Shown here in pieces: positions 16,155 to 63,104 of a stretch of DNA of 64,000 nt. Made by a program: the position numbers and the translations under genes. The DNA lies in contig NC_087246.1 of NCBI RefSeq assembly GCF_037042905.1, positions 32,488,001-32,552,000 on the forward strand, in the 5' to 3' direction. How positions within the stretch are numbered: position 1 is the first letter of the stretch; each line of letters opens with the position of its first letter. Source of the DNA: Lytechinus pictus. Lineage: Eukaryota. The notes under the pieces are model-generated. The model was not told the origin of the DNA, did no database searches, and saw nothing but the letters and a program-made list of their open reading frames with translations.

Positions 16155-16712
16155 ATGGTTCAGGGTCAACAATGGACAGTGGTGAAGTTTGCATCCACTG
16201 GAATAGCATTCATGGCTTTCGTTCTTTACCTTTACCAGGCAGGTTCTCTTCCATTTATACCGACCAAAAACGCCCCGAAGTCGGATGGCGAGCGTCTGAC
16301 CTATGCTTTCCGTTGCCTGGCATTTTCCATCCTGCCCCTCTTCATGGGCATCAGAGCTGTGGGAAACAAACGATTCAGTAACATCGACACCCTTGGGGCA
16401 GATCCGACCGCACCGGTCGACCCCGTCAAACATCGAGACTTCTTGACCCGCCAAAGGAATCTCCAGAATACCTTGGAGCAGACAGTCTTACACATCGGAG
16501 CAGTCCTAGCCCTGGCATCAAGTCTCCCACTTGATCAACTCTCCGTGATACCCGTCTTGGTCTTCTTCTTCGTCATCGGTCGGATCACCTACTATATTGG
16601 ATATCTTTACTTTGATAACCAACTTTACAGAGGGTTTGGTTTTGGTGTAACGTTCATGCCATCTGTAGTTGGCCTTGGTTATGCCCTCTTTATCATAATT
16701 TTTCGAAATTAG
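16155..16712 (+). CDS. TMEM79-like MAPEG-superfamily membrane protein, copy 1 (185 aa, single coding exon)
   Basis: Four hydrophobic segments; LQNTLEQ motif, GRITYYIGY, and YRGFGFGVTFMP resembling the TMEM79 C-terminal RGFGYGLTFLP. Start context CCAACATGG. Intact in both tandem copies. Confidence 0.88.
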   Translation: MVQGQQWTVVKFASTGIAFMAFVLYLYQAGSLPFIPTKNAPKSDGERLTYAFRCLAFSILPLFMGIRAVGNKRFSNIDTLGADPTAPVDPVKHRDFLTRQRNLQNTLEQTVLHIGAVLALASSLPLDQLSVIPVLVFFFVIGRITYYIGYLYFDNQLYRGFGFGVTFMPSVVGLGYALFIIIFRN

Positions 16713-17048
16713 TGTTCTGACCCAATCCGAATTCTCGTTATATTAATTAGGGTGTATGATGATGAGGGTATAAATGTTTTAGCGAATGACTCAATTTAGT
16801 ATAAATCGTATGATTTTAGGCATGATACTCTAACAGCCATTGATAAGTTAGTTTCTCTCTAAGGAGGTATATATTTTGTTTAAGTATTGTATCTTCATGT
16901 ACATGCAAGCCGTATGTCAAGAAAATAAGTATCATCCATTATGATTCATAAAGTAAGTACATGATTATCTCAGTGCACTCATGAGAAACGTGTCTTTTTG
17001 TTATGATTTAACAGTAAATGTTTTTATCTCGAAAAGAAATAGAATTAC

Positions 17049-17604
17049 AGGGATACTCCAGGCTGATAATAATGTGATTTGAACAGATAAAAAAATCAGA
17101 CAAACAATACACTGAAGATTTTATCAAAATCGAACAAGGGCTAACGAATGACATTTTAAACTGAAGATTTGCATTATTTTAGTGAAACAATTCTATATAT
17201 GTCTTCATGAATATTCAATGAGCAAACTAATGATGTCATATCCCCACACGTTCTTTCGTATTAATACGTGAAATTTATTCAAATTATGTCCTCCAAGATA
17301 TAAAAGAATTGGATTGATAACTGATTTAATACAAGTTATTTTATTATTAAGGGGACATCATACACACATTATATTAAATAACTAAGATTTCATGTTTATA
17401 AGAAAAGGGAAATTTGAGACGTGACACTACCAGCCCACCTGATGGATTTTTATGACGACGCGCATAATAAAAAAAACAATAACACAAAACATTGCTAAAA
17501 TTTAAAATTCAATAACTTCGTTATTTGTTATCAGATTTTGATGAAATTTTCAACAGTTTGCCCGTTTAATATAGATAAAATTATTTTCAGCCCGGATTAC
17601 CCCT
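17049..17604. mobile_element. TTAA-flanked (Kolobok/piggyBac-like) MITE
   Basis: TIRs AGGGATACTCCAGGCTGA / TCAGCCCGGATTACCCCT, flanked by TTAC and TTAA. A related remnant ends at 48156. Confidence 0.7.
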
Positions 17605-18431
17605 TTAAAATGAGCTGCTTGCGTGTTTTGTGCCGGAAAAGTTTATGAAATCTTTGTTTAATCATAGTCCAAAAAGCTTCTCAACTACGCTATGGGGGTC
17701 TTTTTCTAATGGCACCAACTTTGGACTTTAAAGGCCCTTTCTTCGTTCACACAAAAGCTGTCTCATTTTACCCTATAAATCTTTATAAATCACGTACCCT
17801 CATCAAGCTCATTTCATTCAAGCATTACTATTTTTTTCTGGGGGTTGGACCTGTAGTTTGAATAAGTTGAAAATAAAGATTAAATGAAATGACCCATGCA
17901 AACTCTTTGACATGCATTTTAGTCTCGTCCTTACCCTTGCTCCCAAGCTTTATATGAATTATTTAAAAAAAAACACGAAATCCTGCACTTGTAAACATAC
18001 TTGAAAAACCACTCAACTGTGTTTATAGTTCAAAGTCCAGAATCTGGACTCCAGATCGGAGATAAAGTTCGGACTCGGTCTTATTTAAGGCACTTCTTTT
18101 CTTTAGTACATCAGATTCAATTATTGATCTGAATAGAGCTCAACATTAGTAAACGCAGACTTATGGTTCTGGATTCAATCAAAACACCGGTTTCTGCAGA
18201 GGTATAACCTTAAATCTCGATGCATTATACACATCTATACTGCTTTATTCTGCTTTTGCCCCGTCAAACAAATTATTATTAGCTCGCTGTAAGTTGCACA
18301 TCATAATTTATGAACATACTAAAACAGCTGGTCTACTACAAAAGGTTTCTTACTATAAGAGTCGTCGAAAAACTGTTGGCTGTGCTATTTTTTAGTTTAC
18401 ATTTCCTAAACAAGAATCTTAATCTTCCAAC

Positions 18432-18989
18432 ATGGTTCAGGGTCAACAATGGACTGTAGTGACGTTTGTATCCACTGGAATAGCATTCATGGCATTCGTT
18501 CTTTACCTTTACCAGACAGGTTCTCTTCCATTTATACCGACCAAAAACGCCCCGAAGTCGGATGGCGAGCGTCTGACCTATGCTTTCCGTTGCCTGGCAT
18601 TTTCTATCTTGCCCCTCTTTATGGGCATCAGAGCTGTGGCAGATAAACGATTTGGTAACATCGACACCCTTGGGGCAGATCCGACCGCACCGGTCGACCC
18701 CGTCAAACATCGAGACTTCTTGACCCGCCAAAGGAATCTCCAGAATACCTTGGAGCAGACAGTCTTACACATCGGAGCAGTCCTAGCCCTAGCATCAAGT
18801 CTCCCACATGATCAACTCTCCGTGATACCCGTCTTGGTCTCCTTCTTCGTCATCGGTCGGATCACCTACTATATTGGATATCTTTACTTTGATAACCAAC
18901 TTTACAGAGCATTTGGTTTTGGTGTAACATTCATTCCATCTGTAGTTGGCCTTTGTTATGCCCTCTTTATCATAGGTTTTCGAAATTAG
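18432..18989 (+). CDS. TMEM79-like MAPEG-superfamily membrane protein, copy 2 (185 aa)
   Basis: Tandem paralogue of 16155-16712 with 12 amino-acid differences and the same motifs. Confidence 0.88.
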   Translation: MVQGQQWTVVTFVSTGIAFMAFVLYLYQTGSLPFIPTKNAPKSDGERLTYAFRCLAFSILPLFMGIRAVADKRFGNIDTLGADPTAPVDPVKHRDFLTRQRNLQNTLEQTVLHIGAVLALASSLPHDQLSVIPVLVSFFVIGRITYYIGYLYFDNQLYRAFGFGVTFIPSVVGLCYALFIIGFRN

Positions 18990-20728: not shown

Positions 20729-22215
20729 GTGTATCATGTAATAATAAAAGAAGATCTAAACTTCAAAGAGATACTTAGCAAAATAAAAAGACTTTTGGGA
20801 TGGTGGAAACAAAGGGATCTAACCCTAATGGGTAAAATACATTTGTTGAAAAGTTATGCATTATCAAAATTAAATTACGTCTCGTCACTTTTAGTTGTTC
20901 CTAACTGGTTGTTCGTTGAGGTGGAACGGATCACTTTTGAGTTTTTATGGTCAGGTAAAGACCGTATAAAGAGAAACATTATGTATCAGGATTACTCACA
21001 CGGTGGGTTAAGAATGATGAATTTTAAGTTGTTCATAAAGGCCCAACGTCTAATGTGGCTGAAACGTCTATTATACGGGGAACGCAATGCTGGGTGGAAA
21101 TTGTATTTTGATTTCTGTTTTAGATCACTCGGTGGGAGACTGTTATTTCTATGCGATTTTGATATTTGCAAATTAACACAGATAATGCCACAATTTTATT
21201 CTGAAATGCTGAAGGCTTTGCAAGATATGAGAAAATATAGATATATACAAAAGAGGAAGTAAACCCGATTATATTTAATAATAAGAATGTATGTGTAAGA
21301 GGTAAAATGATTTTTGATATTGATCTTTATAATAAGGGAATATACACTGTAGATCATATTTTTGATAACGGGGTTGTGAGACCTGTGGCTTATTTTCAAA
21401 ATCTTGGGGTAACCGCAGATGAACTGCTCCACATTATTGATATAGTACATGCTATTCCAACTACTTGGAAAAATGCGTATAGCTCTATTAAATTTATAAA
21501 GATTGACGATGAGAACTTCAATGTTAATTTGAATATCAGTAAGCTGGAAACTACTTTTGAGGTGATTAAATCAAAAACGATTTATAGTTGTTTTGTTGAA
21601 AATTTACGGGAAACTTATAATTTAACATTGAAAAATAAAAACATTAATTTGAATTTTACAGATGTTGAAATGTGTAATAGGCTTGCCCAAACCAGGAGCA
21701 TAACTTTGATTAGGAAACAAAGATAATTCCAGTTCTTACTTTTACACGGGGCGATTTATACCAAAGAACAGTTATTGAGATTCGGGTATGTTAAAGACAG
21801 TTTATGCTCTTTTTGTGGCAGAGAAACCGAATCATACATTCATATTTTTCTAAATTGTTCCAAGGTAAAACCTTTATGGGAATTTTTTATTAAATATTTC
21901 TGTATGTCTGAATTAAGAGATTTAGAATGGAAAGATATACATTTGGGATTATCTGGAAGTACGAATAGAAATAATTGTGTAAACTGTATAATCTTTTTCA
22001 TCAAATATGCCATTTTCCAATCCAGAACTAATGGTCAGGTTCCTTCCTGCCATAAGATACAAAAATATATTGCGGAACGTAGGGAGGAAGAAAAATGCTT
22101 GGCTAGAAAATCGGGCAAATTGAGTATACATGTAAAGAAATGGGAAGAACTGAAGGTGAATGAGGCAGTGAATGCAAACAGGTGTGAAGCGTCTGCTGGT
22201 GCTGTGAGTATGTAA
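20729..22215 (+). mobile_element. Decayed L1/Tx1-clade LINE, 3' part of ORF2
   Basis: LTLMGKIHLLKS..SKLNY, FLWSGK..IKR..GGL and the zinc-knuckle CSFC..ESYIHIFLNC. Frameshift near 21260 and an in-frame stop at 21724-21726. A GT-rich 3' UTR follows. Confidence 0.85.
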
Positions 22216-23059
22216 TGGTATGTCCGCGTGTGAATGCGAGTGTGCAATGGTATATGTCCGCGTGTGAATGTGAGTGCTTGCTGCCAGGGATGGGGGGGGG
22301 GGGGTCTTCCTATCTCCATGGTTAGCAAAATATATGTTTGAGTAGATCCAAAAAGAAAGAATATTTTGTTTGGGGTGTGGAAAATGTTTTGTTTGTTTTA
22401 TTTTGTTGATGTTGTGTTTTGTTTTGTTTTCGTGTGTGCTTTATATATAAAATCTTTATTCAGATTATTGTATATTTTCTAAGAATAAACATAGAGACTT
22501 TTTTTTTCTGTATTGTCTTACAAAAGTTGGAGGAATGGATATACATGTATAAGTACTTTTTTTATTATGGGATAACCTCTTCACTTAAAAAAGTCTGTAC
22601 TTTTGATTTTTCATCATACAATACGGTATTATTATACAGTAAATACATGTGAAATTACGAGGTTTTTGTTATTGGTATTATGGGTTATGATAATATTTGT
22701 TTGAAAAATTTATATCAAGATGTATATTATTTCATTAGTTATATTGCTGTATAAGTGTACTTCACTTTAATTTGCATACATGTATTTGATTTATTACCCT
22801 TGTATGTATGAAAAATGTAATAGTATCTGAATAAAGGCTAAAAAAGCAAGAAAAAAAATTCATGTGGGTGATGTGTGCCGCAGAAGCGTCGATCCTGGGG
22901 GCAGGGGGGGGGGCGATCGCTCCACCAACGAAAATATTGGGGGGAAGCAAGCATAGCGTTTTGCCCCCCCCCCCCAATAATTCCGTAAGTGCGGGAAATG
23001 ATTCCATCAATTCCATCTAGAAAAAAGCTTTCCGAAGTGGTATTAATAATGGCCATAGC

Positions 23060-25080
23060 CAGGGGCGGATCCAGCCTTCGCCAATGGGGGGGGGGGGGGG
23101 GGCCCGGAATTTTTTTCCCCGATCGGCTGTTCGAAGATGATTTTTGCCGAGTTATTTGGTTTCTTTGAAGGGGTAGTCACTTCTTAGCTTTATACTTGTT
23201 GAATAAACATAAATATATAATACCATAATCCTTATTTATATAATGCGAGCGCCAAGCGCGAGCTAATTTTTTTTGGAAACTTATGTATTTTTTCCTAAAA
23301 TTGTGAACATTCTGGGCAATGTTTGTTATCCTGAAAAAGATGTGTATGCAAATCAATAATTACTACGAACGTGAAGCGCGAGCACAAATGAACTGATGGA
23401 AAAGGTACTGTTAAAGACTACTTGACTAGCCATGAAGACGTTACATATTTTAAAAATCAAATAATGCGAGCGCGAAGCGCGAGCTGAATTTTTTTGAAAT
23501 TTTTACCTAAGGAATGGAAATTCTAAGCACTTTTTGTAACTTAAACAGAATAGGTATACACCTAAACAATTGATGCGAGCGCGAAGCGCGAGCGGAAAAT
23601 TTCGAGATTTAGACCTACTGAACGAGACACTCTATTCAAGTTTTGTAAATCATGAAAAGGATGAGTAAGTGGGGATCTTCCTTACATTAATAATGCGAGC
23701 GCAGAGCGCGAGCAGAAATATTTTATATACGTTTTGAACTGATCGAAAAGGTACCTGTTAAGGACTGCTTGCACTTAGCCATGAAGACGTTACATATTTC
23801 AACAATCAAATAATGCGAGCGCGAAGCGCGAGCTGAAAAAATATCAAGATTTAAACCTAAAAACGGGACACTCTATCCATGTTTTGTAAATCATGAAAAG
23901 AATGAGAAATAGGGGATCTTCCTATACATTACTAATGCGAGCACAAAACGAGAGCAGAAAATGTTTGATATTGTGATCTGAAACTGGATAATAATTTAGT
24001 AGAGAACAAGTTATCTATCTGAACAAACATGCGCGGGCGTGTTTCATATTTAGACCTAGAATCTAGGCATTCTAAATAATCTTTGATCGCGCGAGCTTAA
24101 ACTATTTGATATTCCTATCTGAAAAAAACGTCAATTTCAGCTCTATTTTTTAAGCACTTTGTAGGAAAATTGTGAGGTGGATATGGATTGCACTTAATAA
24201 AGAGCTGATATTTTCAATTATTATTACTTTGAGTTTTTAGGACCGGGACATCCTTAGGACATGCTTATGACAATGATGACTATCTTCCTATTCCTCTTGC
24301 TAGGTGCGAGATGAAACAAAAGGGACAATTTAATTATTATATTAATATCTTATTCATTAATTCCTAATGAGGGCGCGAAATCTGATATTATGGCCTGAAA
24401 ACTGGACATTTTAAGCACTTTTGTAATTATAAATAGGATGCATCAAGATGCACCAAAATTTTTGATAAACTGCCATGAAAAGGGGATTTTAAGTAGTTTG
24501 TTGTATAATCAATATTGAGACATAATTATATAACTTGCCAATCAAAATGCGAGCGTGCAGCGCTAGCTGATACGTTTTGACAATCAGACCTGAAGAGGGA
24601 TATTTTGAAAACTGTATGGAATACGCGAAAATAATAGGTACTTGATAAATCAAAATTTGCGAGCGCGCAGCACGAGCAGACAATGTTAATATTCAGACCA
24701 TGAAACTGACATTTTTACAGAGCACTTTAAAAAAATCAATTTGTAAATCACACAAAATAATGAAAGTTATATTTCCGAGGTGAAATATGTTTTGTATATT
24801 GACTTCCAAATTTGATATTTAAACTCCATATTGAACAAGATATGAAAATCACCTAACAGGCAATGCGAGGGCGAAGCGCGAGCGAAAATTTTATATAGTG
24901 ACATGAAAGATTATATTTATTTTTAAGTCTTCCCCTCATCTTATTTTATTCACTCGTCTTCCTCCTCTTCTTTTTTTCCTTCTCTTTCCCCTCCTTTCCC
25001 CCTTTTTTCTTTCTTTCCTTTCTTTTTGCTCCGCCAATAGGGGGAGGGGGGCCCCTCGCCCCCCCCTGGATCCGCCTATG
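23060..25080 (+). mobile_element. Complete 2.0-kb non-autonomous hAT element with internal ~120-bp tandem subrepeats
   Basis: TIRs CAGGGGCGGATCCAG / CTGGATCCGCCTATG, exact 8-bp TSD GCCATAGC (23052-23059 and 25081-25088), recurring ATGCGAGCGCGAAGCGCGAGC motif. Confidence 0.9.
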
Positions 25081-25141
25081 GCCATAGCTATTGCTAATTT
25101 AGAAAAAAACCTTAACTTAATCAATGTAGGCATGCCTGCTG

Positions 25142-26800
25142 AAATTTTTTTTTTTTGATTTGAATTTATTTTTCTTCTACATAACAATATAATATAACAT
25201 AAATGTAACAAACATATATTGACAATAAATCAGGTATAAATCATTTAGCATAAAATTAATAGCAGAAGATGGATTGCCATAGTAAGCAAAAAAATGCTTG
25301 AAAAATATGACAAACCGAAACATATTTTAACCATATAATCATATTATGAGCAGAATGGACAATAACAAATTATTAAAGTATCAATTAAGTATAATATAAA
25401 AAAGAGAAAAACAAAATCTAACAAGCCAAAACTTGCTATAANNNNNNNNNNNNNNNNNNNNNNNNNNNNNNNNNNNNNNNNNNNNNNNNNNNNNNNNNNN
25501 NNNNNNNNNNNNNNNNNNNNNNNNNNNNNNNNNNNNNNNNNNNNNNNNNNNNNNNNNNNNNNNNNNNNNNNNNNNNNNNNNNATGATGGAAACGGAATAT
25601 TGGAACATGATTATGACACAAGAAAGTTTATTTTACATATTCCGATAGTAACATGACCTTAACTTTAGCTTTGAATGAGTGTAGGGAGCAAGAGGATTTA
25701 ATTGAGTCTGGGAGAGGATTCCAAAGGTCAGGACCATGATGTCTTACGGATCTCTGGGCAATACGTAGTTTTGGATTGACTAAATGTAAATTAGAGGAAT
25801 TACGGGTGGGGTAATCATGAATGGTTTTATTCAAAGTATAAAAATTTTGAAATGAATTTGGTAGCATCCCATTTAAATACTTGAAAATGAACAATAAACT
25901 TTGTAGTGTATTAATGTCAAATACTGTCAGAGTTTTTAATTGGTAAAATAATGGTTTGGAGTGAGATAAATATTGTGAACCGGTACAAATGCGAAGCGCT
26001 TTCTTTTGCAATAAGTGAATAGAATTTATTTTTGTTTTGTTTGTTGTGGCCCATACTAAATTGCTATACGTTATATACGGTAAAATCAATGAATTATAAA
26101 GCAACGCAAGTGTTTTGCAAGGAATACATTTCTTTAATTTATATAGTATACCAACATTCCTAGAAATAGAAGTTATTATATGGCGTATATGTTCGTTCCA
26201 ATTTAAATTTTCGTCAATGACGACACCCAAAAACTTCGTTTGATGCTTTCTTTCAAGAGGAACATTATCTATAAATATGTTGTAATGTATGTCATTTATG
26301 TGAGATTGTATGTGTTTAAAATACATGAAATTAGTTTTGTTGATATTGAGAGACAATTTGTTACATTTAAACCATAAAGATAATTTCAGTAACTCATTAT
26401 TTAGTGTGTCAACTAGGGTGTTAAGGTTATAATGTGAGTAAAATATGTTAGTATCATCTGCAAATAATATAAACGATAGAAGAGAAGTTGTATTAGTTAA
26501 GTCATTGATATATAATAAAAAAAGTAATGGGCCTAATATCGATCCTTGTGGGACACCGCATCGGATTGGTAGAAAAGTTGAAGAAACATTATTAAATACA
26601 ACATATTGTTTTCTATTGGTTAAATAGCTTTGAAACCAGGAAAGAGCAACACCACGAATTCCATAAGAGTAAAGTTTTTGAAGTAAAATTTGGTGGTCAA
26701 TCGTATCAAAGGCCTTTGATAGATCCATAAATACCCCTATTACATGTTCTTTATTGGCTATAGAATCTGTTATTTTATCATATAATCTAATCAGCGCAAA
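25142..26800 (-). mobile_element. 5'-truncated L2/Crack-type LINE with uninterrupted RT C-terminal ORF (25628-~26800)
   Basis: DLSKAFDT, GVPQGSILGPLLF, FADDT and FLGVVID motifs. The 3' UTR spans the N gap and ends in AATAAA plus an A-rich tail at ~25142-25170. Confidence 0.9.
25442..25582. other. Assembly gap (141 N)
   Basis: Run of N within the LINE 3' UTR. Confidence 0.99.
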
Positions 26801-27148
26801 TTGGCTTGGTAAAACGCGTTCGCATGATGTCATCAGCAAACATATAGACTCCTGTCCAGCTGTCACAATATTGATTAGAAACCTTCGGGATTCATATTAG
26901 GTGAGGTATAGTACGTCCAAGAGTTGGATAAATATTGTCAGAAGTGAAGACTACTCTGTCAGTAACTGTCAAGCACCTAAAAACCTATTTGCTTATACAT
27001 GTCTTTTATATCTTCTGCTATTGTCCTTTATATCTTAAATGTTGTCTTTCAATCACATGGGTTTTTTTCTGTGGCGGGGGATCACTTGTCTATATCCATG
27101 CACGCACGTTTTGACATACATCCTTATCACATTTTTTTTAATATTAGA

Positions 27149-28884: not shown

Positions 28885-29155
28885 ATGGTTGTCAAGGTTT
28901 ACGTGGATTACAGTTCGCAGCCTAGCCGCGCTCTTGTCATCTTCCTCAGAAACACCAAAATCCCTTTCGAAATCGTAGAAGTAAACCTGATGGGAGGTAA
29001 GCGCTATTGAATTCGAATTAATGAAAACCAATACGAAAACAGATCATGATTTCTTGTAAATGAACATTATTATGCATGTTGTTTTAGTTGAAGATGGGCG
29101 ATCTTGAAACTGTGATCGCTGATTGAATGATTTTTTTCCTTCTTTTCTTGGTCGT

Positions 29156-29189
<34 letters not shown>

Positions 29190-32100
29190 GGGGGGGGTCC
29201 CATGGCACCAAATCCTGCGTCTATTTTCCAGTGGGAGGGGGGTAGTCCTTAATAGAAAATTATTTCCTTCTTTCCTGGTCATGAAACTTTCATTTATTTA
29301 TTTCCTTTTTTTTTTTGGGGGGGGGGGTCCCATGGCAGCAATCCCCACGTTTGTATTCCAGTGGGGGGAGGGGTAGTCCTTAAGACCAATTTTTAAAGCA
29401 ATATTTGCATATTTCTAAAACAAGATTAGATACTTCGTAAGGTCTAGATCAGTAATGCGAGCGCAAAGAAATCCTGAAAATGAGCCGTATTGAGGACTCT
29501 TAACGGAATTCATGGTTATTTCCATTTTATACACTCCATTCAAATTTAAATTTCCCTTTAGTATGTATTTTACATCACATACCTGATTAAAGAAAATTAA
29601 CAAGAATAGAAAGATGGTAAAATAAACGGGAACCTTTATGTGTGCTTGGTTGCAGGGTGGGGGAAATTTAAAAAGATAATGCGATGTATAAATCATTAAA
29701 CAGTTTTCAAAATGAATGTTTTTATTCAATAACAATAAATATTAAAAAAAAATTATGTGAAAACAATATCAATGGTCATTATGCGTAATACGATAACAAT
29801 CTACTATCACCATGATAATCGCCATTATTATTATTACAATTACTAGTACTATAATTATTATTATCAATATTATTATTATCATTATTATTGTTATCATCTG
29901 TTATTGCTATTATCATTATTATTACTATTATCATTTATTATTATACTTGTCGTTTGATTCATCATATTGAAATATTACGTTCGACCTGATCAGGGATGAT
30001 AACACAGGCCATCACCCCCTCATTTGAAATATAGGGGGGATATTGGCCCCTACCCACCCCCCCCCCTCCCCGATCGACACCCATGGTTAATCCTGTTAGC
30101 TCTCACAAGTTTATCCTTGAAATGTGAATTCGTACAATCGGTTCGTGAAATATGCATTATACACTGCAAAAACTCCGGTGTTGATTTAACATCAGCCCGG
30201 AAGCTATAGATGTCCACACCAGAGAAATATTGAAACAACACCAGTTTGGTATCAAACCGATGCTGTTTTAATACTAATTGGTGTTGTATAAACACCTATC
30301 TGGTGTTAGACCAAAACGAAACTGGTGTTGTTTAACACTTCTCTGGTGTGGACATTATAGATTCCTGGCTGGTGTTAAATCAACACCAGAGTTTTTGCAG
30401 TGTAGGCAAAAGAAGTTGATCAAATGATTTGAAAATATCATTGATAAAAAGAATAAACGAAAGGGACCTAAAAAAGATCCTTGATGAACACCATATGCAA
30501 TCACTTAAAGTTAAGATCGAGTTGCGTTGGTACATTGATGACAATTATAAAGATAGCCAGAAAAATAGATCACCACGTAACATCTGCTACATAAGATTGT
30601 TCTACGGATATCAATGAAAATTACACCTAACCAAAACTGTATCCGCACATCTTTCTTCACAAGACAGCAAAAGCACATACAAGCATTCTAAATGGAAATA
30701 TGACGCCCAACCTGTTATCCATCCACTGTAACATTAAATTGCCGCAATGTTCTTCGGTTTTGACCTGGATTTTGCTTCATGAAGATGTTCTGAAGTCACT
30801 TTCACTCACGTTAAGCGACTGACCTCCCCTGGCAGATCCAGGGGGCACAGCCAGCCCGTGCCCCCCCCCTTTGAGATGCACAAATTTTTTCGTGGACGAA
30901 ATCCCCTGAATTTTCGGTTGAAACACCTTTTTTTTTGCTTGTCAAACTTTTCCTGGGGAAAATGTGCCCACTCTTTCGAAAAATCCTGGATCCGCCCCTG
31001 CAGACCTATCTGGCAGTGTCTAAAACTCGTCAAATTCCAGTTATTCGTAAACGCATTAATAACTTTATGACCAGCTTTATAAAACATCATATGATCATGG
31101 TGATGCAATTTACAAATATTAGACCAATTGCTATTTCGTTCATGACCAGCAATCCAGCATGAATTAAATTTCATGAAATGGCACCTGGATAACAACACGA
31201 TCTTCTTTCCACCATCGAAAATAAACTATGCTGCAACTGGTCAGTATGCGGATTAGATTGTTGCGAAATCGCCTCCGAAAAGAGAGGAATAAAATAGAGG
31301 AGCTAAAAATCAGTATAGCATTGAAACAGATTCAATCTACCAAAATCTAGAACCAACATTCTTGATAAAATTAATATCAAGGATGAAAATCAGAGCAAAC
31401 ATAAGAAAATAATAATGATATTGTTGATGAAGTAAAGTTGTGATGAATAAATGATATTTAGAATTATAACAAAAGCTTAATTGGGTATTTTTTCTTCGAT
31501 AAAAACACAAAACAAACAAACCAAACAAAAAACACTATCGATTTATAATTTTGTTTAACATTTACAAAACAGCTAATTGTTAATAAAGAATGTTTATCCA
31601 TGTATTTGTTAATCTTTTCATTTATTAATTTTTCTTTTACATTTATCAACGTTGTGAATTGTTTTGTTCAGAAGACCATCAGAAACCCGAGTTTGTAAAA
31701 ATAACTCCTCTCTGCACTGTACCAGCCATTCAAGACGGTGACTTCAGCATGGGTGAAACGTAAGTTAGTGTCCCTTGTGTTAAAATTGAAGGAACAATCA
31801 CCTTCTGATATTTCAGAATACATAATATTTGGGAATACTTATGTCATAGGCTTTGTTGACTATGGGTCACGAGTCAGCATTGTGTGGATTGGATCAGCTA
31901 CAGCCTCTTTGATCAGTATAATCTCAAGTCCATTACTATTAATTACTATGGCCTGTCATGTACGTTGTTGGTTTTATACCAACCATTCCTACTGGACAGA
32001 ACACAGCGTCCCACAGTGAGTGCCACAGTGTGGGACACAATATGAAATCACATTCACACTGTTAAATTTGAGCATTTTAACGTGTGAACAGTCACACTGT

Positions 32101-45545: not shown

Positions 45546-45595
45546 ATTTTCTTTATAAAATATGTTTTGAATTCAAGAAGACTTGCTTGGCATCA

Positions 45596-50585: not shown

Positions 50586-53500
50586 ATGGTTGTCAAGGTT
50601 TACGTCGATCTCCTTTCGCAGCCTTGCCGCGCTCTTGTCATCTTCCTCAAGAACACCAAAATCCCGTTCGAAATTGAGAAAGTAAATTTGAAGGCTGGTA
50701 AGCATTATAATTAAATTTTCTTACGTATTTCCAAGGGATTCTAACACTTTTGTTGACATTATCGATGTCAAAGGTACTTCATAAAATGATTAACGATTAA
50801 AGATTGTGTTAATCCTAAACATCTCTGGTCAGATGTACCACTTTCTCATATATATCGATAATCATACTACTATGATTGTAAGACTGGAAATATGAAGAGT
50901 AAACCTGATGTATACATGTAATTTCGCAGTTGTACTGACGAAGTTGACTCGAAATCGATCAAAGCTAGCCTTGTTTCTAATATACTATATCTGTGAGTTT
51001 GACGTCGCTTTGCATGGTGTGACTGCAGTAATAATGCTATAGTCACATCAACCAAACCGAAAGGATTTCATTAAAAATAGGATTGGTGGTTCTGGCCCGA
51101 ATTTGGTATCGAATGCGTGACTGTGCCATTAGCATGATTAGTAAGCAGATGGCAGAAGTGTTTTGGTCATTCCTAGAGAACGGTATAGGACATCGTCGTT
51201 GTGATCTGTCAGTCCTAGTTGTAAACCTTTTATTTCGAGCCATGTTGCCATCAAGAAGGGATCAATCCATCCCGGGATGGGAGAGGGGGGGGGGGGCATT
51301 CCCATTGACATGTGGATACCAAATTGTCAAAAAACGCGCAAAAAATTATATCATTTTCAAGAATCAGGGTATCAGAAACACTCCCATGCTGGAAAAGGGA
51401 TACATATTGCGGCAACCTACGTGATTAGGGTTTGATCTACAAGGGTATGAAGGAATAAGAATATATTAAAAAGGGTACCTTTTTGCCAGCATTACGCGTT
51501 TAGGGTCCGATTTACCCCGCGATTTACCCCGAGTCGATTTATGTTATTTTCATTTCACTTATTGTTTCTGCAACCTTTCAATTTCATACAAATTAACAAA
51601 GAAAATACATATTTCATTACAAAATATTTAACAATACAAAGTCGTATTTTCTATAACACAATGATTCAAGAAGGCTGCTGGGGTTGCCATTATTTAGTTT
51701 GACTGCGTGGCAACCGTGGAAAACAATCACGAATTATATTTAATAATACAATCTTAATGTAAGAATGCAGAATGGGGTGTATTGCGAGTGAAATGCACAA
51801 GACTTACATGGAACAGAGCAGTGATGCTCTTTGTTGGGAATATGGTATCTTTCTACTTTCCAGAATAAAAATTCTTCGTATTTTATTTATTTATTATTAT
51901 TTTTTTTTTTTTTTGGGGGGGGAAGGATATCATTTCTTACCCAATACTTGCTTAGTTCGGGGTTCTTTTATAGCTATTGTTAAGGGCGGGGTGCGTAACC
52001 AATATACTTTTGGAGGGTAGCGTTTCACACTATACTGTACTTGTAAGTGGTGTGTTTTTAGATCATTGAAAATACGTGTTCAGTGTATGTTTTAAACCCC
52101 CCATGGATATGCATGATATCCACTGGTCAATGGAACTACCTTCTCCCTCCTCATCAGGCCAGTCATAATAGTACAACATAAATTTACCTTTGCATTCCAT
52201 TAACTATTAAAAAGAGGTAATTTTTCTGGAGGGGGGGGCAGGCATCCATGGGATTGACCTTTTTGGATCAACGTTTTGGTCACGTATTTTTTGGCAGCAT
52301 CTATAATACCGTACGTACGATCTTTTTTGATGGGGGAGGGGGTGAAATTATATTGAAGTCATCCAAGTTTGTTCAAATGCCTCTCAAGTTTTCTTTATTA
52401 TCAGCAGATTAAATAGGCCTGCATGTTTGCCTTTTCTTCTTGAGTCAATAGTCGTGCTTTGAACAATCATTATTATCCACATGTAAATAAAGTTAGTAAG
52501 CAAACAAAATTTGCAAGTCATGTTTGCTATAAAATGTCACTTGCACCTGTATGAAACATCCATTAGTTTTGGGGAGCTTAACTTCAGTTGAATCATCTTT
52601 TTCTCCGAGGTACTGCCCTTTTTCATGTTTGTACATGCTCAAAAATATCCTGGCTTTGCTTGTTCATTCATTCTTTCTCAAATATTCGGTCTTTTGTTAA
52701 ATTATTGATTTATAATAATTTCATCTCATCGCGTTTACTTCCATTTCCAACCATCACAATAAGTCATCTTCTACCGATCTTTATAATACACTAAATGCAA
52801 AACTTGAGTACAAAATAGTCAGGACAAGTATGCAACAGGTTGGGGATGGAGGAGGCTGCTAAAAAAATAAAAGTCGAGTTTGTAGAGGACAGTCTCATAT
52901 TAAAAGCATTCTTAGAAATAGTATAGATCAAAGGAAAATAACATTTAAAAAAATAATCTACAAAATGACAAGGAGAGCATATTAAAGACTTATCTACACT
53001 TTTAAAATGTTGGGCAACATACTGTCGACCACACAACAATTGGTTACAAAATTTATCAAATTCTGGGTAGTTTTCAACCAATACTGTGTAGTTTCCACCC
53101 AAAGCACACATTATTGGTTTAAAACTACACAGAATTGGATAAAGTTTTAACCCATTGACGTGTGGACAGTATGTTGCCCAATATTTTCTAAGAGTGTGTA
53201 AAGAAAAATAACAAGAAAGACAAGAACATGAAGAAGAGAGGAAGAAACTTTCCGAATCTTGCACCGACACTCACTATGAAACCCAATGTTTTAATTCATA
53301 AAAAACTAATTTCTATTAACCCGTTTAACAAAAATTATTTATGAATTCATTCATCTATTCATAATTTTGTTTGTGATTCCGTTTTTCAGGAGAACATAGG
53401 AAACCTGACTTTGTAAAGATAACCCCTCTCTGCACTGTTCCAGCTATCCAAGATGGTGACTTCAGCCTGGGAGAAACGTAAGATCTATTATCGTATTTTT

Positions 53501-55750
53501 CTTCGTGCTACTCACATTTCTTGTTTCTTTGATAAAGGGGGATGATTACAAAATATATATTATTTTGTTTCAATGATGACGACGTTCAAATGGTGAAACG
53601 ACACATTAATGAGGTCCAATAATTACTATTGGCAAAAAATAAAATATCAATGACGATACTGGTAATCATGGTGATAACGTAAACAGATGATTATGCCAAA
53701 ATTAATTATGATAAAGATAATCCGTGCAATGGTGTTTTAATTAAATCATTACAGAATGCTCAGTTCAGTTGCTCTGTTAAAAAGGAGACACAAAGAAATA
53801 TACATTTACGCACATACCCACAAAGAAATACTGAAATATCGTTTTTTTGCAGAGTGGCGATTATCAAGTACCTGGCGACCAAGTATGCAGACCTAGTCCC
53901 TGACCACTGGTACCCGAAGGATCTGGAGAAAAGAGCCAGAGTTGATGAATACATGGCATTTCATCATACAGGAACAAGAGGGGGATGTTGTGGAATCTTC
54001 ATCAGTGAGGTGAAAAGCACTATTAAGAGTTTTCCATCTTTCTGGATTTTCGGTTACACAGTCATGGGGGGGGGGGGGTGTGGACTGAAAATTAAAACAC
54101 ATCGGTCTAAGGCTTCATAGAAGGGGCCCACTTGCTTGTGCGTAAATCACTTTTGTTTGAGCAGGGGAATGGTTATTCATCGTAGCTGTCTGTTCATAGT
54201 CTGCAGGCGCAGACCCTGATTAAATATTTGATCAATAAGTGTGTCTCCACGCAAAGACTAGCACATACAAAACTTGCTGTTTCAATTCAATTCATGAGCG
54301 AGAAGGGCCTTCGGTATACAAGGCATGAATAGGCTGCACATTCAGACCCTTAACTAGCCAGAGTGAAGGGTTTGCACAGCAGACTAGTCTGTTCATCAGG
54401 GCCCAGCAAAGGTCTAGTCCCCTTCCTCGGTGAATTGGTAAAGAGTCAACTAATAACAAAACCCGCAGAAGAAGGAGAAGAAGAAGAAGAAGAAGAACGG
54501 AAGTGATATGCTAATAGCAGTGTTTGATTCAACAAGTCGATATTTTTAATGTTCTTTTTAATACAGGTTCTCATCCCATTGTTTTCGGAAGGGAAAGAGC
54601 ATGCATCGGAGGAAAGGTTGAAAAGAGATACAGAGAATTTGACCAAACAACTTGATAAGCTGGAGAATGCTTTCTTACAGGACAATGACTGGTTGGTCGG
54701 AGTTGACATCTCTGTGGCGGATGTGCTTGCCGTTTCCGAGGTAAAACGGCAACAACAAATAGAAAAAAAGTGTACCACCAAAATCTATTAGGCTGTTAAT
54801 TAATTTTTTTTGTAAATGGGCAGAAAATATGCTGAAAATGTCATTGAATATTGCTAGAACGATATAATACATAGAAATGCCAACAGGGAAATATTTTGGA
54901 GTTTGTCATGCAAAGAGCAATATTTTGGGGTCATCTGAAGATTTTTGTTTACATGAAGTAATCTATAAAAAAAAGTAACATACTATACGTTAATTGCATA
55001 TTTCATTTATAAACATCATCATGTATGCTCATTAAGTGATTAAATAGCCTCCCATATATGAATCGCATAAAAGCAAATTAAGTAATGGTTAAATTCAAAC
55101 CTCTTCACTCCAAGAAAAATAGTTTCTATTTTCCCCTTTTTATGTGATTTTTTTCCTGATAACTTACTGTGGACCAGTGCCATATACTGGGAGCCTTGTA
55201 GGTTGCAATTTGCACCTTCTTCCCTTTAATGAAAGGTGCACAATTTCACATTAAATGTATACCCCGGTGTGACATCGGTAAGATCACTGGCGGATCCAGG
55301 GGGGCACAGCCGGCCCGTGCCCCTCCCCCTTTTAAGAGGCACAATTAAAATTCGTAATATAAAATGCCGTTAAAACAGAAGTGTCCCCTCCTTTGAAAGT
55401 GAAGACCCTTTTTTTCATTTTTTTTTTGCTCGTCAAATTTTTCCTCGGGAAAATGTGCCCCCCCCCCTTCGAAAAATCCTGGATCCGCCCCTGGGTAAGG
55501 GCTAAGTTGGACATATATAATTTTACAATAAATAATATTTCTTAACAAATAGGCACTATTATGCATAGTTATTGTTAATTTACTTTTTTTCAACGATCAG
55601 ATGATGCAAAATACCATAAACGGACGTGACGTCACAGAGGGGCGACCGAAGCTCAGAGCTTTCGTAGATCGGGTGAAGAATCGTCTTAACCCAACCTTTG
55701 ATGAAGTCCACGAAGTCTTGTATGCAAGGAGGGATAGCTACGAGAAATAA
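50586..55750 (+). CDS. Glutathione S-transferase theta class, gene 3 (5 exons, 226 aa)
   Basis: Exons 50586-50697, 53390-53477, 53853-54009, 54567-54740 and 55601-55750, GT-AG, 681 nt in frame. Confidence 0.92.
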
Positions 55751-59551: not shown

Positions 59552-61394
59552 ATCATTCTGCATCCTTTATGTCATATTTTTAATTTATCACTATCTTCTG
59601 CCATAGTTCCTTCTAAAATGAAAATCTCAAAAGTTATTCCTGTACATAAAAAAGGTGATCTACATGATGTCTCTAATTATCGTCCCATTTCACTACTACC
59701 ATATTTTTCAAAGATTTTAGAAAGAATTGTTTATAATCGATTATATAATTTTCTTAACTGCAACTCTCTTTTAAATGATGTGCAATATGGATTTTTAAAA
59801 AATGTTTCCACTGAAATGGCCCTAATTAACTTACATGATTATGTTATCAACTCACTAAATAAAAAATTACACACTATCGGAATATTTTTAGACCTTAGCA
59901 AGGCTTTTGACTGCATTGATTATAATATACTTTTACACAAATTACAGTTTTATGGAATTAGGGGTCATGTATTAAGTTGGTTTCAGAATTATTTATTAAA
60001 TCGTGTGCAATACGTATCATATAAAAATGTTTTATCTGAACCATTAAATGTTTTATGTGGTGTGCCCCAAGGATCAATCCTCGGACCGCTATTATTTCTA
60101 ATATTTATTAATGATTTACCAAAATGTTCAGACAAATTGAAATTTTTGTTATTTGCGGATGATACCAATATTTTAGTTTCTGATAATACACTACAATCTT
60201 TGAATAATGTTTTGAATCAAGAATTACCTCATGTAACCGCATGGTTTTACTATAACAAACTCTCTTTGAATATGGATAAATCGAACTATATATTATTTCA
60301 TGGACATAATAGAGTAAATGATATTGAAGTATTAGATATTAAAATGAATAATCAAGTTATCAAACGTGTAAGTAATTCAAAGTTTTTAGGCGTTTTAATT
60401 GACGAAAGACTTTCATGGAATAATCACATAATGGATGTGACAAATAAAATATCTAAGAATATCGGTATCATCCGCAAACTTAGTGATTTCTTGCCTCAAC
60501 ACATTCTTTTAACTTTGTATAATACCTTAATCTTGCCTTACTTGTCTTACTGTAATGTAGTGTGGGCAAATACATATCCTTCAAAACTAGAAAGATTGTT
60601 TATTTTACAAAAAAGAGTAATCCGAATATGTTCATTTTCTCACAGATTGGCCCACACTAAAGAACTTTTCGTGAAATTCAATGTTCTAAATATCTATCAA
60701 CTCAATTCCTACTTTTGTGCAAAATTAATTTTTAAACATAAACATAATATACTCCATAATTCAATATCGTCTATGCTTGATTTAAATGTTAATATTCATG
60801 ATTATAATACAAGAAACAAAAATAAATATCACTTATGGACTGTAAATAAAAATTATGTATTATTCTCATTTAGACACCATGCTCCAGCTGTTTGGAACAA
60901 TCTTCCAATTGAAATAAGATCAATCGGTTCAACGAACGCTTTTAGCAGGAAATTGAAACTATATTTAATCAATAGTGTGTGAAAGCAAGGATTTTTACTG
61001 CCTTTGTGTGTTTATGTATTGGGTTTGTGCGGTTAAACGTGTTTTAACTTATGTTTATAGTATTACATGTACATGTATTATCAAATGATTTCAGTTATTG
61101 AATTAAATTTTAAATGAGCATTTTATCAAATTTGTAATTTCAATTTGGCTTATTTTATTTTTTTATGTAAGGGTGGTTATCTCGACAAACCTTGATAGGT
61201 TTTTATGACCACCTAATTCCAATATTGTATCTCTCTATTGTCATTTGTATCTGTTTAATACTTGTTTTACATGTACCTTATATTTTCTTGCCTTATTATT
61301 GCACATTGTATTTGTTATTACTGTATTCTATACTCTGTATTGATTTTTATTGGAATTGAATAAAACATTGAATTGAATTGAATTGAAAATTGAA
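59552..61394 (+). mobile_element. 5'-truncated L2/Crack-type LINE with uninterrupted RT ORF (to 60982)
   Basis: NYRPISLL, QYGF, DLSKAFD, GVPQGSILGPLLF, FADDT and FLGVLID motifs; AATAAA and an (ATTGA)n tail at ~61359-61394. Confidence 0.92.
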
Positions 61395-61707: not shown

Positions 61708-62017
61708 CGCATACATTCGTAATTCCGAAGCTTCGTTATTCGGAAGGTTCGGTTATTCCGAAGGTTCGTATTTCCGAAGGTTCGTAAATCCGAAGGTTCG
61801 TTAGTCCGAAAACGAAATGAGGTTCGTAATTCCGAAGGTTCGTTAATCCGAAAACGAAATGAGGTTCGTAATTCCGAAGGTTCGTTAATCCGAAAACGAA
61901 ATGAGGTTCGTAATTCCGAAGGTTCGTTAATCCGAAAACGAAATGAGGTTCGTAAGTTCGTGTTTCGGAATTACGAACCTTCGGAATAAAGAACCTTCGG
62001 AATTACGAAGTGTCACC
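61708..62017. mobile_element. Foldback/Mutator-like element with (TTCGTAATTCCGAAGG)n arms, copy 2
   Basis: Same termini as 35842-36307. Exact 9-bp TSD GTTCGCGGT at 61699-61707 and 62018-62026. Confidence 0.88.
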
Positions 62018-62427
62018 GTTCGCGGTCCGATTTTAGAACAAATCGCATATTGATCATTTTCTGAAAAAGTGAAGGGAACATATCATTTTATTTCATATAT
62101 TGAAGAAGGCTGAGCATCGACATTTTTATTATATATAGACACTCAAAATGCTGGGCAACATACTGTCCACTGTTTTGGGAAATGTAATTTTCGTAATATA
62201 TATATATTCTGGGCAATTATTATCCAATTGAGCAAATTTATTACCCGATTATTAGTTTTTACTATCCAATTTGGTCAGATTTTGTGGACAGTATGTTGTC
62301 CAGTGATGGTTAAAAAAAATTGGGCCTTTTTGCCTAACCTTTTTAAGAGTGTACTGTACATCGTAGGACCTGCGTCATTACTATTTTACCACTGAGTTCT
62401 ACACGATATAGGCTTACTGTCAGTATA

Positions 62428-62666
62428 CACTGTAAAAACTGTGGTGTTAAAACTGACACCAGTGGGTGTTAATAGAGGACCACACCCTCTGGTGTTAAAA
62501 TTACACCCTAGAGATTGAATATAACACCAAAGAGTGTACATGTAACAACCAAAGGTGTTGCAATAACACCTATAGGTGCTAAACTAACACTGTCAATTTA
62601 ACATCGGTGTAAAATAACTGGTGTGGTCCTCTATGTACACCGGTTAACACCGCATTTTTTGCTGTG
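62428..62666. mobile_element. TA-flanked MITE (family C) upstream of GST gene 4
   Basis: Reverse-complement homologue of 56961-57191 with TA flanks. Confidence 0.85.
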
Positions 62667-62992
62667 TATGTTCAACCAAAGGCAGAATTTGTACGAAGGT
62701 AATATAACGATCCAAGTGAACACGTTTAATAGTGAAAAGACTTCAACTAAATACGTTTTATATCGCTATGCACCAAAACACTCCTCTATTTCGAAACCAA
62801 CTCATTAGTTATTCCACAATCTCAAAGTTCGGCCAGTCATGTGATCACTTGGATCCAAGTTGGATCGTTATATTACCTACGCGACATCGGCGCGACATAC
62901 GTCTGGAGAGAAGATCTTGCTTGATTATCATCGTCAAAGGACATGCAATTTCTTCGAATCCACGTCTGACAAGAAAAAAAAAACTCTTCATC

Positions 62993-63104
62993 ATGGTTGT
63001 CAAGATTTACATTGATACGCTATCCCAGCCTTGCCGATCGCTCATCATCTTCCTCAAGAACACCAAGATTCCGTTCGAATTGGTAACGGTCAACCTCCGA
63101 GATG
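62993..63104 (+). CDS. Glutathione S-transferase theta class, gene 4, exon 1 (remainder presumably beyond the window)
   Basis: MVVKIYIDTLSQPCRSLIIFLKNTKIPFELVTVNLRD/G; 112 nt followed by a GTAATA donor, the same length and phase as exon 1 of the other three genes. Confidence 0.85.

What the first reader, a model, noticed from the sequence alone, without database searches (positions are those of the whole stretch)
16155..63104. Tandem TMEM79-like MAPEG genes directly upstream of a theta-GST array: candidate glutathione-defence gene cluster
Seen: two MAPEG-like genes and at least four theta GSTs lie on the same strand within 47 kb, with only transposon debris recognisable between them, and both families are locally expanded. 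Established: MAPEG proteins (MGST1-3, LTC4S, PTGES) and cytosolic GSTs are structurally unrelated families that both use glutathione; TMEM79 is MAPEG-related with an unresolved biochemical function. Inference: this may be a co-regulated membrane plus cytosolic detoxification cluster and a guilt-by-association clue to TMEM79-like function. Chance adjacency is a real alternative.
Basis: partly seen in the sequence, partly recalled or inferred. Interest (0 to 1): 0.72.

Follow-up and report, generated by a model that had tools for sequence, protein, structure and literature searches.

The report
Membrane and cytosolic glutathione-enzyme genes adjacent
In the sea urchin Lytechinus pictus, two copies of a small membrane (MAPEG-type) gene sit next to four theta-class glutathione transferase genes, and the same order is found in the sister species, but nothing tested shows that the two groups work or are switched on together.

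Summary
The window is Lytechinus pictus chromosome C2. It holds two intronless 185-aa MAPEG-domain genes at 16155-16712 and 18432-18989, which are 94% identical and which NCBI names 'TMEM79-like'. About 9.9 kb downstream on the same strand is an array of four intact five-exon theta-class GST genes: three in the window and a fourth that starts at 62993.

The assembly gap lies in retrotransposon debris. L. variegatus joins the flanking blocks 189 bp apart, so the scaffold join is sound.

The MAPEG proteins model as a five-helix MAPEG fold and a confident homotrimer. The residues that align with the MGST1 glutathione-site motif are 94-100% conserved across 100 relatives, so a glutathione-dependent membrane enzyme is likely.

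The 'co-regulated defence cluster' reading is unsupported:
- The adjacency is shown only within the genus Lytechinus.
- Other MAPEG and GST-theta loci in the same genome are unlinked.
- Diadema, Patiria and Acanthaster homologues have no GST within 10 kb.
- 50 kb of S. purpuratus GST-theta arrays hold no MAPEG gene.
- ARE-like sites are not enriched.
- Three RNA-seq runs gave no reads on either MAPEG gene.

Orthology to vertebrate TMEM79 could not be tested. My verdict is a real but ordinary neighbourhood of two tandemly expanding families, of modest interest.

The parts
1..3083 (-). 5' exons of a Rabaptin (RABEP1-like) gene, transcribed away from the MAPEG genes. Exon matches lie at window 1-88 and 2949-3083, and the rest of the gene lies upstream of the window.
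   Evidence: PF03528 exon matches at C2:32487930-32488088 and 32490949-32491083 on the minus strand. Further Rabaptin and Rab5-bind exons extend back to C2:32455406.
10324..11426 (+). LINE reverse-transcriptase fragment in the 13 kb spacer between the Rabaptin gene and MAPEG_1.
   Evidence: RVT_1 E 1.1e-15; ORFs listed.
16155..16712 (+). MAPEG_1: an intronless 185-aa MAPEG-domain gene that NCBI names 'TMEM79-like'.
   Evidence: PF01124 E 1.2e-14. It is 99% identical to XP_054765796 of L. pictus. The AlphaFold model has pLDDT 94.5 and a MAPEG fold. The trimer model scores 0.83 against 0.00 for the best control.
18432..18989 (+). MAPEG_2: a tandem duplicate of MAPEG_1, 94% identical at the protein level, with dN/dS 0.37.
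   Evidence: The duplicated unit 15618-16967 matches 17893-19246 at 85% over 1396 bp.
20729..27061 (.). Lineage-specific insertion of retrotransposon debris. It contains LINE ORF fragments at 20729-22215 (+), the assembly gap at 25442-25582, and an RT ORF at 25628-26866 (-).
   Evidence: zf-RVT and RVT_1 hits and the gap sequence. In L. variegatus locus B the flanking blocks are 189 bp apart.
28885..36986 (+). GSTT_a: theta-class GST of 229 aa. Exons are 28885-28996, 31672-31759, 34350-34506, 35618-35791 and 36828-36986.
   Evidence: Gene model with GT-AG introns. It is 94.8% identical to the L. variegatus 229-aa GST (P0178), which is the length of the GST called downstream of each MAPEG array there.
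40696..45545 (+). GSTT_b: theta-class GST of 226 aa. Exons are 40696-40807, 42927-43014, 43371-43527, 44418-44591 and 45396-45545.
   Evidence: The model equals NCBI P0177 at 100%. Pfam finds GST_N and GST_C. The best solved relative is human GSTT1, E 9e-50.
50586..55750 (+). GSTT_c: theta-class GST of 226 aa, a recent segmental duplicate of GSTT_b (94% protein identity, dN/dS 0.18). Exons are 50586-50697, 53390-53477, 53853-54009, 54567-54740 and 55601-55750.
59618..60982 (+). LINE reverse-transcriptase ORF between GSTT_c and GSTT_d.
   Evidence: RVT_1 E 9.8e-34.
62993..63104 (+). GSTT_d exon 1. Exons 2-5 lie beyond the window, at window-equivalent 64950-65037, 65673-65829, 67148-67321 and 68353-68502. 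Intron 3 has a GC donor.
   Evidence: The model equals NCBI P0188 at 100%.

Best explanation
Two gene families that each expand by local tandem duplication happen to be neighbours on Lytechinus chromosome C2. No coupling between them is shown.

Family 1 is a pair of intronless genes for small five-helix MAPEG membrane proteins. They most likely form homotrimers that bind glutathione at the subunit interfaces and act as membrane-bound glutathione transferases or peroxidases on lipophilic substrates. This function is inferred, not shown.

Family 2 is four ordinary cytosolic theta-class GSTs. GSTT_b, c and d keep the LSQPCR motif that aligns with the human GSTT1 active-site region, and GSTT_a keeps the Ser-Gln-Pro core as SSQPSR.

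Each gene is a separate open reading frame or gene model. The two families are separated by 4.4 kb of ancestral spacer, which retrotransposon insertions have enlarged to 9.9 kb in L. pictus. The neighbourhood predates the L. pictus / L. variegatus split, but it is not shown to be older. No functional coupling was found: no shared regulation, no conserved linkage beyond the genus, and no shared element.
For: Identity of the parts:
- The MAPEG genes match Pfam MAPEG.
- Their structure model has pLDDT 94.5 with an extra N-terminal helix plus a four-helix core.
- The top 39 Foldseek matches are all mPGES-1, LTC4S or MGST2, with TM-score by target 0.53-0.75.
- The homotrimer model scores ipSAE 0.83 against 0.00 for the best control. 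The three runs agree in at least 96% of contacts and the partner pLDDT is 80. That mark was reached by 21 of 30 proteins solved as pairs of one chain and by 0 of 23 solved as single chains.
- GSTT_b matches Pfam GST_N and GST_C, and its best solved relatives are GSTT1 and GSTT2.

Glutathione site: across 100 relatives averaging about 30% identity, R73 is kept in 99%, N105 in 99%, T106 in 100%, E108 in 94%, Q109 in 98%, R143 in 100%, Y150 in 100% and R159 in 99%. A profile alignment to an MGST1-like exon of L. pictus, itself aligned to solved MGST1 (2h8a), places R101, N105, E108, R143, Y150 and R159 on MGST1 R73, N77, E80, R113, Y120 and R129.

Selection: dN/dS is 0.37 for the MAPEG pair, 0.18 for GSTT_b against c, and 0.11 for a against b.

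Linkage within the genus: both L. variegatus loci carry MAPEG copies followed on the same strand by a 229-aa GST, 4.4-7.7 kb downstream.

Independence of the two families:
- L. pictus MAPEG paralogues at C2:24.85 Mb, C2:24.77 Mb and C10:25.68 Mb have no GST beside them. The three-gene GST-theta array at C2:16.64 Mb has no MAPEG beside it.
- The L. variegatus orthologue of the 24.85 Mb copy lies between a PRMT gene and an EF-hand gene.
- There is no GST within 10 kb of the homologues in Diadema, Patiria or Acanthaster.
- There is no MAPEG gene in two S. purpuratus GST-theta sub-arrays, 50 kb in all.
- ARE-like sites number 6 against 6.4 expected.
Against: Adjacency of two glutathione-using families, kept in two species, is what a functional cluster would also look like.

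The tests outside the genus are incomplete. They reach only 10 kb of flank. The orthology of the Diadema pair to the window clade is unresolved, because the tree gives a polytomy. Only part of the S. purpuratus GST region was seen.

Co-expression was not measured. The RNA runs are of unknown tissue and stage, only about 6% of each was read, and no GST exon could be laid in the same call.

The profile alignment to MGST1 is weak (hhalign probability 15%, E 0.0018). The trimer pass may simply reflect the model's memory of solved MAPEG trimers.
Confidence: 0.68

Rival explanations
1. A co-regulated glutathione-defence cluster. In this reading the membrane MAPEG enzymes and the cytosolic theta GSTs share regulatory input, for example a stress-responsive enhancer. 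Their linkage is kept by selection because together they cover lipophilic and soluble electrophiles.
For: The genes lie on the same strand and are close: 4.4 kb of ancestral spacer. The order is kept in both Lytechinus species and at both L. variegatus loci. Both families plausibly use glutathione. Both are copy-number dynamic, as environmental-response genes often are.
Against: Conservation between two congeners needs no selection, because flanking non-coding DNA is still about 85% identical. The other loci of both families in the same genome are unlinked. No GST lies within 10 kb of the homologues in three other echinoderms. The sampled S. purpuratus GST-theta arrays hold no MAPEG gene. ARE-like motifs are not enriched. 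The MAPEG genes gave no reads in three RNA-seq runs.
Confidence: 0.17
2. The MAPEG-like proteins are not enzymes. Instead they act as regulators of the vertebrate TMEM79/mattrin kind, an ER protein that binds USP8 and Frizzled. In that case the neighbourhood with GSTs says nothing about glutathione.
For: NCBI names them TMEM79-like. Chen et al. 2020 (PMC7521923) report Tmem79 homologues in cnidarians, annelids, molluscs and Saccoglossus, and a non-enzymatic role in human cells and Xenopus. The model has an extra N-terminal membrane helix in front of the MAPEG core. Five membrane helices have also been described for TMEM79, but that is from my recollection and was not checked here.
Against: The proteins are only 185 aa long. 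From recollection, they lack the roughly 200-residue N-terminal region of the 394-aa human TMEM79. The MGST1-type glutathione-site residues are nearly invariant across the family, including bacterial members, which fits catalysis better than a metazoan signalling role. No protein of vertebrate TMEM79 length appears among the best 150 profile hits.
Confidence: 0.12
3. The adjacency is a scaffolding artefact, because an assembly gap lies between the MAPEG pair and the GST array.
For: The gap at 25442-25582 lies between the two families.
Against: The independent L. variegatus assembly has the same order at two loci. It places the L. pictus blocks from either side of the gap 189 bp apart.
Confidence: 0.02

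Closest known systems
MAPEG superfamily enzymes (MGST1, mPGES-1/PTGES, MGST2, LTC4S)
   Same: They share the Pfam MAPEG domain, the four-helix core fold and a predicted homotrimer with helices 1 and 2 at the interface. The motif R-x3-N-x2-E in helix 2 and the R...Y...R residues in helices 3-4 align with MGST1 R73, N77, E80, R113, Y120 and R129.
   Different: No solved MAPEG is detectable by sequence or by profile, and identity in the structural alignments is only 12-20%. The sea urchin proteins have an extra N-terminal membrane helix, residues 3-28. Their genes are intronless, whereas the canonical MGST-like genes of the same genome match exon by exon.
Vertebrate TMEM79 / mattrin
   Same: Both are distant MAPEG relatives. 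NCBI's automatic name for the sea urchin proteins is 'TMEM79-like'. The literature counts invertebrate homologues as Tmem79 (PMC7521923).
   Different: The sea urchin proteins consist of the membrane domain alone (185 aa). Orthology was not testable here. The nearest relatives found are 170-200-aa proteins of many eukaryotes and bacteria, not proteins of TMEM79 length.
Bacterial and protist short MAPEG family proteins (about 180 aa, annotated 'MAPEG family protein' or 'YecN with MAPEG domain')
   Same: They have the same length and the same invariant residues. A family profile matches them at E 1e-33 to 1e-39, and an echinoid-only profile matches them at about 1e-29.
   Different: They fall in a separate clade from the echinoderm sequences in the tree. 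The profile used included a member of bacterial type, which inflates those scores.
Human GSTT1/GSTT2 cluster (22q11.23)
   Same: Both are tandem arrays of five-exon theta-class GST genes. The LSQPCRA active-site stretch aligns residue for residue with human GSTT1.
   Different: From recollection, the human cluster is interleaved with MIF and DDT genes and has no MAPEG neighbour. Here the upstream neighbour is a MAPEG pair.

Membership tests
MAPEG superfamily (PF01124) | Match to the family profile above the curated threshold | tested here: met
   54.9 and 52.8 bits against a cut-off of 23.4.
MAPEG superfamily (PF01124) | Four-helix membrane bundle fold | tested here: met
   The model has pLDDT 94.5. 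The top 39 Foldseek PDB matches are all mPGES-1, LTC4S or MGST2, at probability 1.00 and TM-score by target up to 0.75, although E-values are only 0.015 or weaker.
MAPEG superfamily (PF01124) | Glutathione-site residues (helix-2 R-x3-N-x2-E; helix 3-4 Arg/Tyr/Arg) | tested here: met
   N105, E108, R143, Y150 and R159 are 94-100% conserved in 100 relatives, and R101 in 64%. They align with MGST1 R73, N77, E80, R113, Y120 and R129 through an L. pictus MGST1-like exon. That profile alignment is weak (probability 15%). The role of these MGST1 residues comes from my own knowledge.
MAPEG superfamily (PF01124) | Homotrimer | tested here: inconclusive
   The prediction supports a trimer: ipSAE 0.83 against 0.00 for the best control. 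The pass may be from the model's memory of solved MAPEG trimers, and it is not a measurement.
MAPEG superfamily (PF01124) | Glutathione binding or catalysis | not testable with these tools
   This needs recombinant protein assays.
TMEM79 / mattrin orthologue | Groups with vertebrate TMEM79 rather than other MAPEG branches in a phylogeny | not tested
   No vertebrate TMEM79 sequence could be obtained. It was not among the best 150 of 1320 profile hits nor among the 120 listed. Only NCBI's automatic name supports the link.
TMEM79 / mattrin orthologue | Long cytosolic N-terminal region before the membrane domain (human protein 394 aa, from recollection) | tested here: not met
   The whole protein is 185 aa and its first helix begins at residue 3.
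Theta-class cytosolic GST | GST_N and GST_C domains, with GSTT1/GSTT2 as the closest solved relatives | tested here: met
   Pfam hits. GSTT1 scores E 9e-50 and GSTT2 E 1e-40, against 6e-22 for the delta class.
Theta-class cytosolic GST | N-terminal catalytic serine in the SQPCR motif | tested here: met
   LSQPCR is present in b, c and d and SSQPSR in a. The stretch aligns with LLSQPCRA of human GSTT1. The catalytic role of this serine comes from my own knowledge.
Functional (co-regulated) gene cluster | Linkage conserved beyond what recent common descent explains | tested here: not met
   Linkage is present in L. variegatus only. It is absent within 10 kb in Diadema, Patiria and Acanthaster, absent from 50 kb of S. 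purpuratus GST-theta arrays, and the paralogous loci in L. pictus are unlinked. Coverage outside the genus is partial.
Functional (co-regulated) gene cluster | Co-expression or a shared regulatory element | tested here: inconclusive
   There were no reads on the MAPEG genes in three RNA runs, and no GST exon could be laid in the same call. The ARE-like motif is at chance level.

The most novel reading that the evidence does not exclude
The short five-helix 'TMEM79-like' MAPEG proteins are active membrane glutathione transferases or peroxidases. In Lytechinus they would be induced together with the adjacent theta GSTs as a two-compartment detoxification module. That would be the first biochemical clue that the TMEM79 branch of MAPEG descends from, or still is, a glutathione enzyme.
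Probability: 0.1. Interest if true: 0.6.

Novelty: new member of a known kind. Interest (0 to 1): 0.3.

Why it matters
If the two families were shown to be co-induced, this would be a rare animal example of a physically linked membrane-plus-cytosolic glutathione detoxification unit. It would also be a handle on the unknown biochemistry of TMEM79-type MAPEG proteins.

As it stands, the useful results are smaller:
- All four GST-theta gene models and the MAPEG pair are verified.
- The scaffold join across the gap is validated.
- The sea urchin 'TMEM79-like' proteins keep an MGST1-type glutathione site, which makes a simple enzyme assay worthwhile.
- The linkage is dated to no earlier than can be shown for the genus Lytechinus.

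Tried and rejected
1. Sequence and profile searches of the MAPEG proteins against all PDB chains found no MAPEG entry. Only the fold search did.

2. I tried to reach vertebrate TMEM79 with a profile headed by a 348-aa homologue. The search returned almost only alphaproteobacterial 180-aa MAPEG proteins and no TMEM79, so TMEM79 orthology stays untested.

3. The ESM Atlas structure search gave only unrelated helical proteins with TM-scores below 0.5 for the query. The feature search gave generic MAPEG clusters with scores below 0.9.

4. Exon-wise Pfam GST_N over the genome missed the window's GST exons. I found them by comparing ORF fragments within the window.

6. P0004, an ENA contig, gave no DNA and only prokaryote-style gene calls, so it is uninformative.

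7. For RNA, the runs that 'hold' the stretch (X1-X4 and X15-X18) also cover intergenic DNA evenly, so they look like DNA and are not evidence of transcription.

8. The ARE motif scan was at chance level.

9. The scaffolding-artefact reading is rejected.

10. Literature searches found no paper on a MAPEG-GST cluster in animals or on sea urchin TMEM79-like genes.


Full report
**Origin of the window.** The window is G000:C2:32488001-32552000 of an 812 Mb genome. The first MAPEG ORF is 99% identical to XP_054765796, 'transmembrane protein 79-like [Lytechinus pictus]'. My spliced GST models b and d are 100% identical to L. pictus 'glutathione S-transferase theta-1-like' proteins. The organism is therefore the sea urchin Lytechinus pictus.

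**The observation.**
- Two single-exon ORFs of 185 aa lie at 16155-16712 and 18432-18989 on the + strand. Both match Pfam MAPEG above threshold (E 1.2e-14 and 5.8e-14) and they are 94% identical. They sit in a tandem unit of about 2.3 kb: 15618-16967 matches 17893-19246 at 85%.
- I found the GST exons by comparing ORF fragments within the window and assembled them into three complete five-exon genes with GT-AG introns.
It is completed by four exons just beyond the window, one of them after a GC donor.
- A genome-wide search with exon 4 finds exactly these four copies here, a separate three-gene array at C2:16.64-16.68 Mb, and one weak match at 31.22 Mb.
- GSTT_b and GSTT_c are part of a roughly 10 kb segmental duplication that includes the introns. 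They are 94% identical in protein. GSTT_a is 82-83% identical to them.
- GSTT_b has GST_N and GST_C domains. Its best solved relatives are human GSTT1 (E 9e-50) and GSTT2 (E 1e-40), far ahead of the delta and epsilon classes. The LSQPCRA active-site stretch is aligned.

**The gap.** The N run at 25442-25582 lies in AT-rich sequence next to a reverse-transcriptase ORF on the minus strand and touches no gene. The L. pictus blocks 19777-20732 and 27062-27855, on either side of the gap, are only 189 bp apart in L. variegatus locus B. The stretch 20.7-27.06 kb is therefore a lineage-specific insertion full of LINE fragments, and the order 'MAPEG then GST' does not depend on the scaffold join. The only other recognisable content between the families is RT debris. 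Upstream, a Rabaptin gene lies on the minus strand with its first exons at window 1-88 and 2949-3083, so it is transcribed away from the MAPEG genes.

**What the MAPEG proteins are.**
- Neither the protein nor a seven-sequence profile detects any solved MAPEG by sequence.
- An exhaustive profile search finds 1320 relatives. Nearly all are 170-200 aa and come from many eukaryotes and bacteria. None of the best 150 has the length of vertebrate TMEM79.
- An AlphaFold model built on 100 relatives is confident (pLDDT 94.5). It shows an N-terminal membrane helix, residues 3-28, followed by a four-helix core.
- The 39 best Foldseek matches in the PDB are all mPGES-1, LTC4S or MGST2.
- Across the 100 relatives, which average about 30% identity, R73, N105, T106, E108, Q109, R143, Y150 and R159 are 94-100% conserved.
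- To place these residues with tools, I fetched an MGST1-like exon of the same genome. It aligns to solved MGST1 (2h8a residues 73-148, E 2e-23). I then aligned the family profile to that exon. R101, N105, E108, R143, Y150 and R159 fall on MGST1 R73, N77, E80, R113, Y120 and R129. The hhalign probability is only 15%, but the register agrees with the Pfam match.
- From my own knowledge, these are the glutathione-binding and catalytic positions of MGST1 and mPGES-1.
- A three-copy model scores ipSAE 0.83 against 0.00 for the best control. The three runs agree in at least 96% of contacts and the partner pLDDT is 80. The interface is formed by residues 44-66 and 97-123. This pass may reflect the model's memory of solved MAPEG trimers.
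- dN/dS between the two copies is 0.37.
- My reading is that these are probably glutathione-dependent membrane enzymes. This is inferred, with odds of about 55-60%.
- Whether they are orthologues of TMEM79 could not be tested, because no TMEM79 sequence was reachable. The name is NCBI's automatic one. The literature does count invertebrate homologues as Tmem79 and assigns vertebrate TMEM79 a non-enzymatic role with USP8 and Frizzled (PMC7521923).

**Is the neighbourhood meaningful? Within the genus.**
- L. variegatus has two loci on CM031016.1, at 57.14 and 59.86 Mb.
- One locus has a frameshifted copy plus two intact MAPEG copies. The other has three intact copies.
- Each array is followed on the same strand by a 229-aa GST, 7.7 and 4.4 kb downstream. 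A 229-aa L. variegatus GST, P0178, is 94.8% identical to GSTT_a.
- The two loci are about 96% identical over 8.9 kb. They may be haplotigs rather than a true duplication.
- The adjacency therefore predates the species split. Flanking non-coding DNA of the two species is still about 85% identical, so retained order needs no selection.

**Within L. pictus.**
- A paralogue at C2:24.85 Mb is collinear over 18 kb with the L. variegatus gene P0002, which lies between a PRMT gene and an EF-hand gene.
- This paralogue carries a 2-bp and a 24-bp deletion in L. pictus.
- Fragments with a stop codon lie at 24.77 Mb, and a 48%-identical copy lies on C10.
- None of these copies has a GST nearby. The 16.64 Mb GST-theta array has no MAPEG.

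**Outside the genus.**
- Diadema setosum has a tandem MAPEG pair with no GST within 10 kb.
- Patiria has a single gene between fibrinogen-domain genes.
- Acanthaster has four tandem copies inside an intron of a CUB gene.
- Two S. purpuratus GST-theta sub-arrays, 50 kb in all, hold no MAPEG.
- There are caveats. The flanks are only 10 kb. The tree leaves the Diadema pair in a polytomy with the C10 and window clades. The S. purpuratus region was only partly seen.

**Regulation and expression.** An ARE-like motif occurs 6 times against 6.4 expected by chance. In three rRNA-depleted RNA-seq runs of this species, with about 8 million records read from each, no read lies on either MAPEG coding sequence. 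A dispersed repeat in the same stretch reaches a depth of 13-16. The tissue and stage are unknown, and no GST exon could be included under the 6 kb limit, so co-expression remains untested.

**Chance.** This is a rough inference, not a computation. With some tens of loci for glutathione-using families among tens of thousands of genes, one adjacent pair somewhere in a genome is not rare. The scan has already flagged another 'GST beside a suggestive neighbour' locus in this genome (s1-322116), which is a reminder that such pairs are selected after the fact.

**Verdict.** The most useful lead is the intact glutathione-site motif in the short TMEM79-like MAPEG family, which can be tested at the bench.

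Noticed in passing
G000:C2:24852100-24852760 (L005 about 5100-5760, minus strand): The L. pictus paralogue that is orthologous to intact L. variegatus LOC121409498 carries a 2-bp and a 24-bp deletion early in the coding sequence, so it is probably a pseudogene. NCBI models it as an odd 130-aa protein (P0007).
   Followed up: partly
window-equivalent 65829/65830 (L002 1829/1830): Intron 3 of GSTT_d has a GC donor (GAG|GCGAGT) where the three paralogues have GT. The NCBI protein P0188 nevertheless matches the model at 100%.
   Followed up: partly
window 47327-47571 and 47618-47969: Two arrays of a 15-bp unit (GGACATCTACCCCCC and its reverse complement) face each other between GSTT_b and GSTT_c. 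They account for the local GC peak of 0.46.
   Followed up: no
window 35928-36088 and 61778-61955: The same 42-bp tandem repeat occurs in intron 4 of GSTT_a and about 1 kb upstream of GSTT_d.
   Followed up: no
window 15200-15593 and 17170-17563: A dispersed repeat upstream of each MAPEG copy attracts RNA-seq reads at depth 13-16. The reads run on into unlike sequence, so the transcripts come from other copies of the repeat elsewhere in the genome.
   Followed up: no
L019 (Acanthaster planci DF978506.1:67337-89070): Four tandem MAPEG copies lie inside an intron of a large CUB-domain gene on the opposite strand. Tandem expansion of this MAPEG family recurs across echinoderms: Lytechinus 2-3 copies, Diadema 2, Acanthaster 4.
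   Followed up: partly
L012-L015 (L. variegatus CM031016.1, 57.14 and 59.86 Mb): Two MAPEG-GST loci 2.7 Mb apart are about 96% identical over 8.9 kb. This could be an uncollapsed haplotype or a recent segmental duplication.
   Followed up: no
L003 8207-8815 (+), about 16 kb beyond GSTT_d: The next recognisable ORF downstream of the GST array is cysteine/histidine-rich and looks like a TRAF-type zinc finger. It is unrelated to glutathione metabolism and was not checked against Pfam.
   Followed up: no
proteins P0197-P0314: Alphaproteobacterial 'MAPEG family' proteins of about 180 aa (Brevundimonas, Bosea, Microvirga) match the family profile at E 1e-33 to 1e-39. This short five-helix MAPEG type is therefore not specific to animals.
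   Followed up: partly
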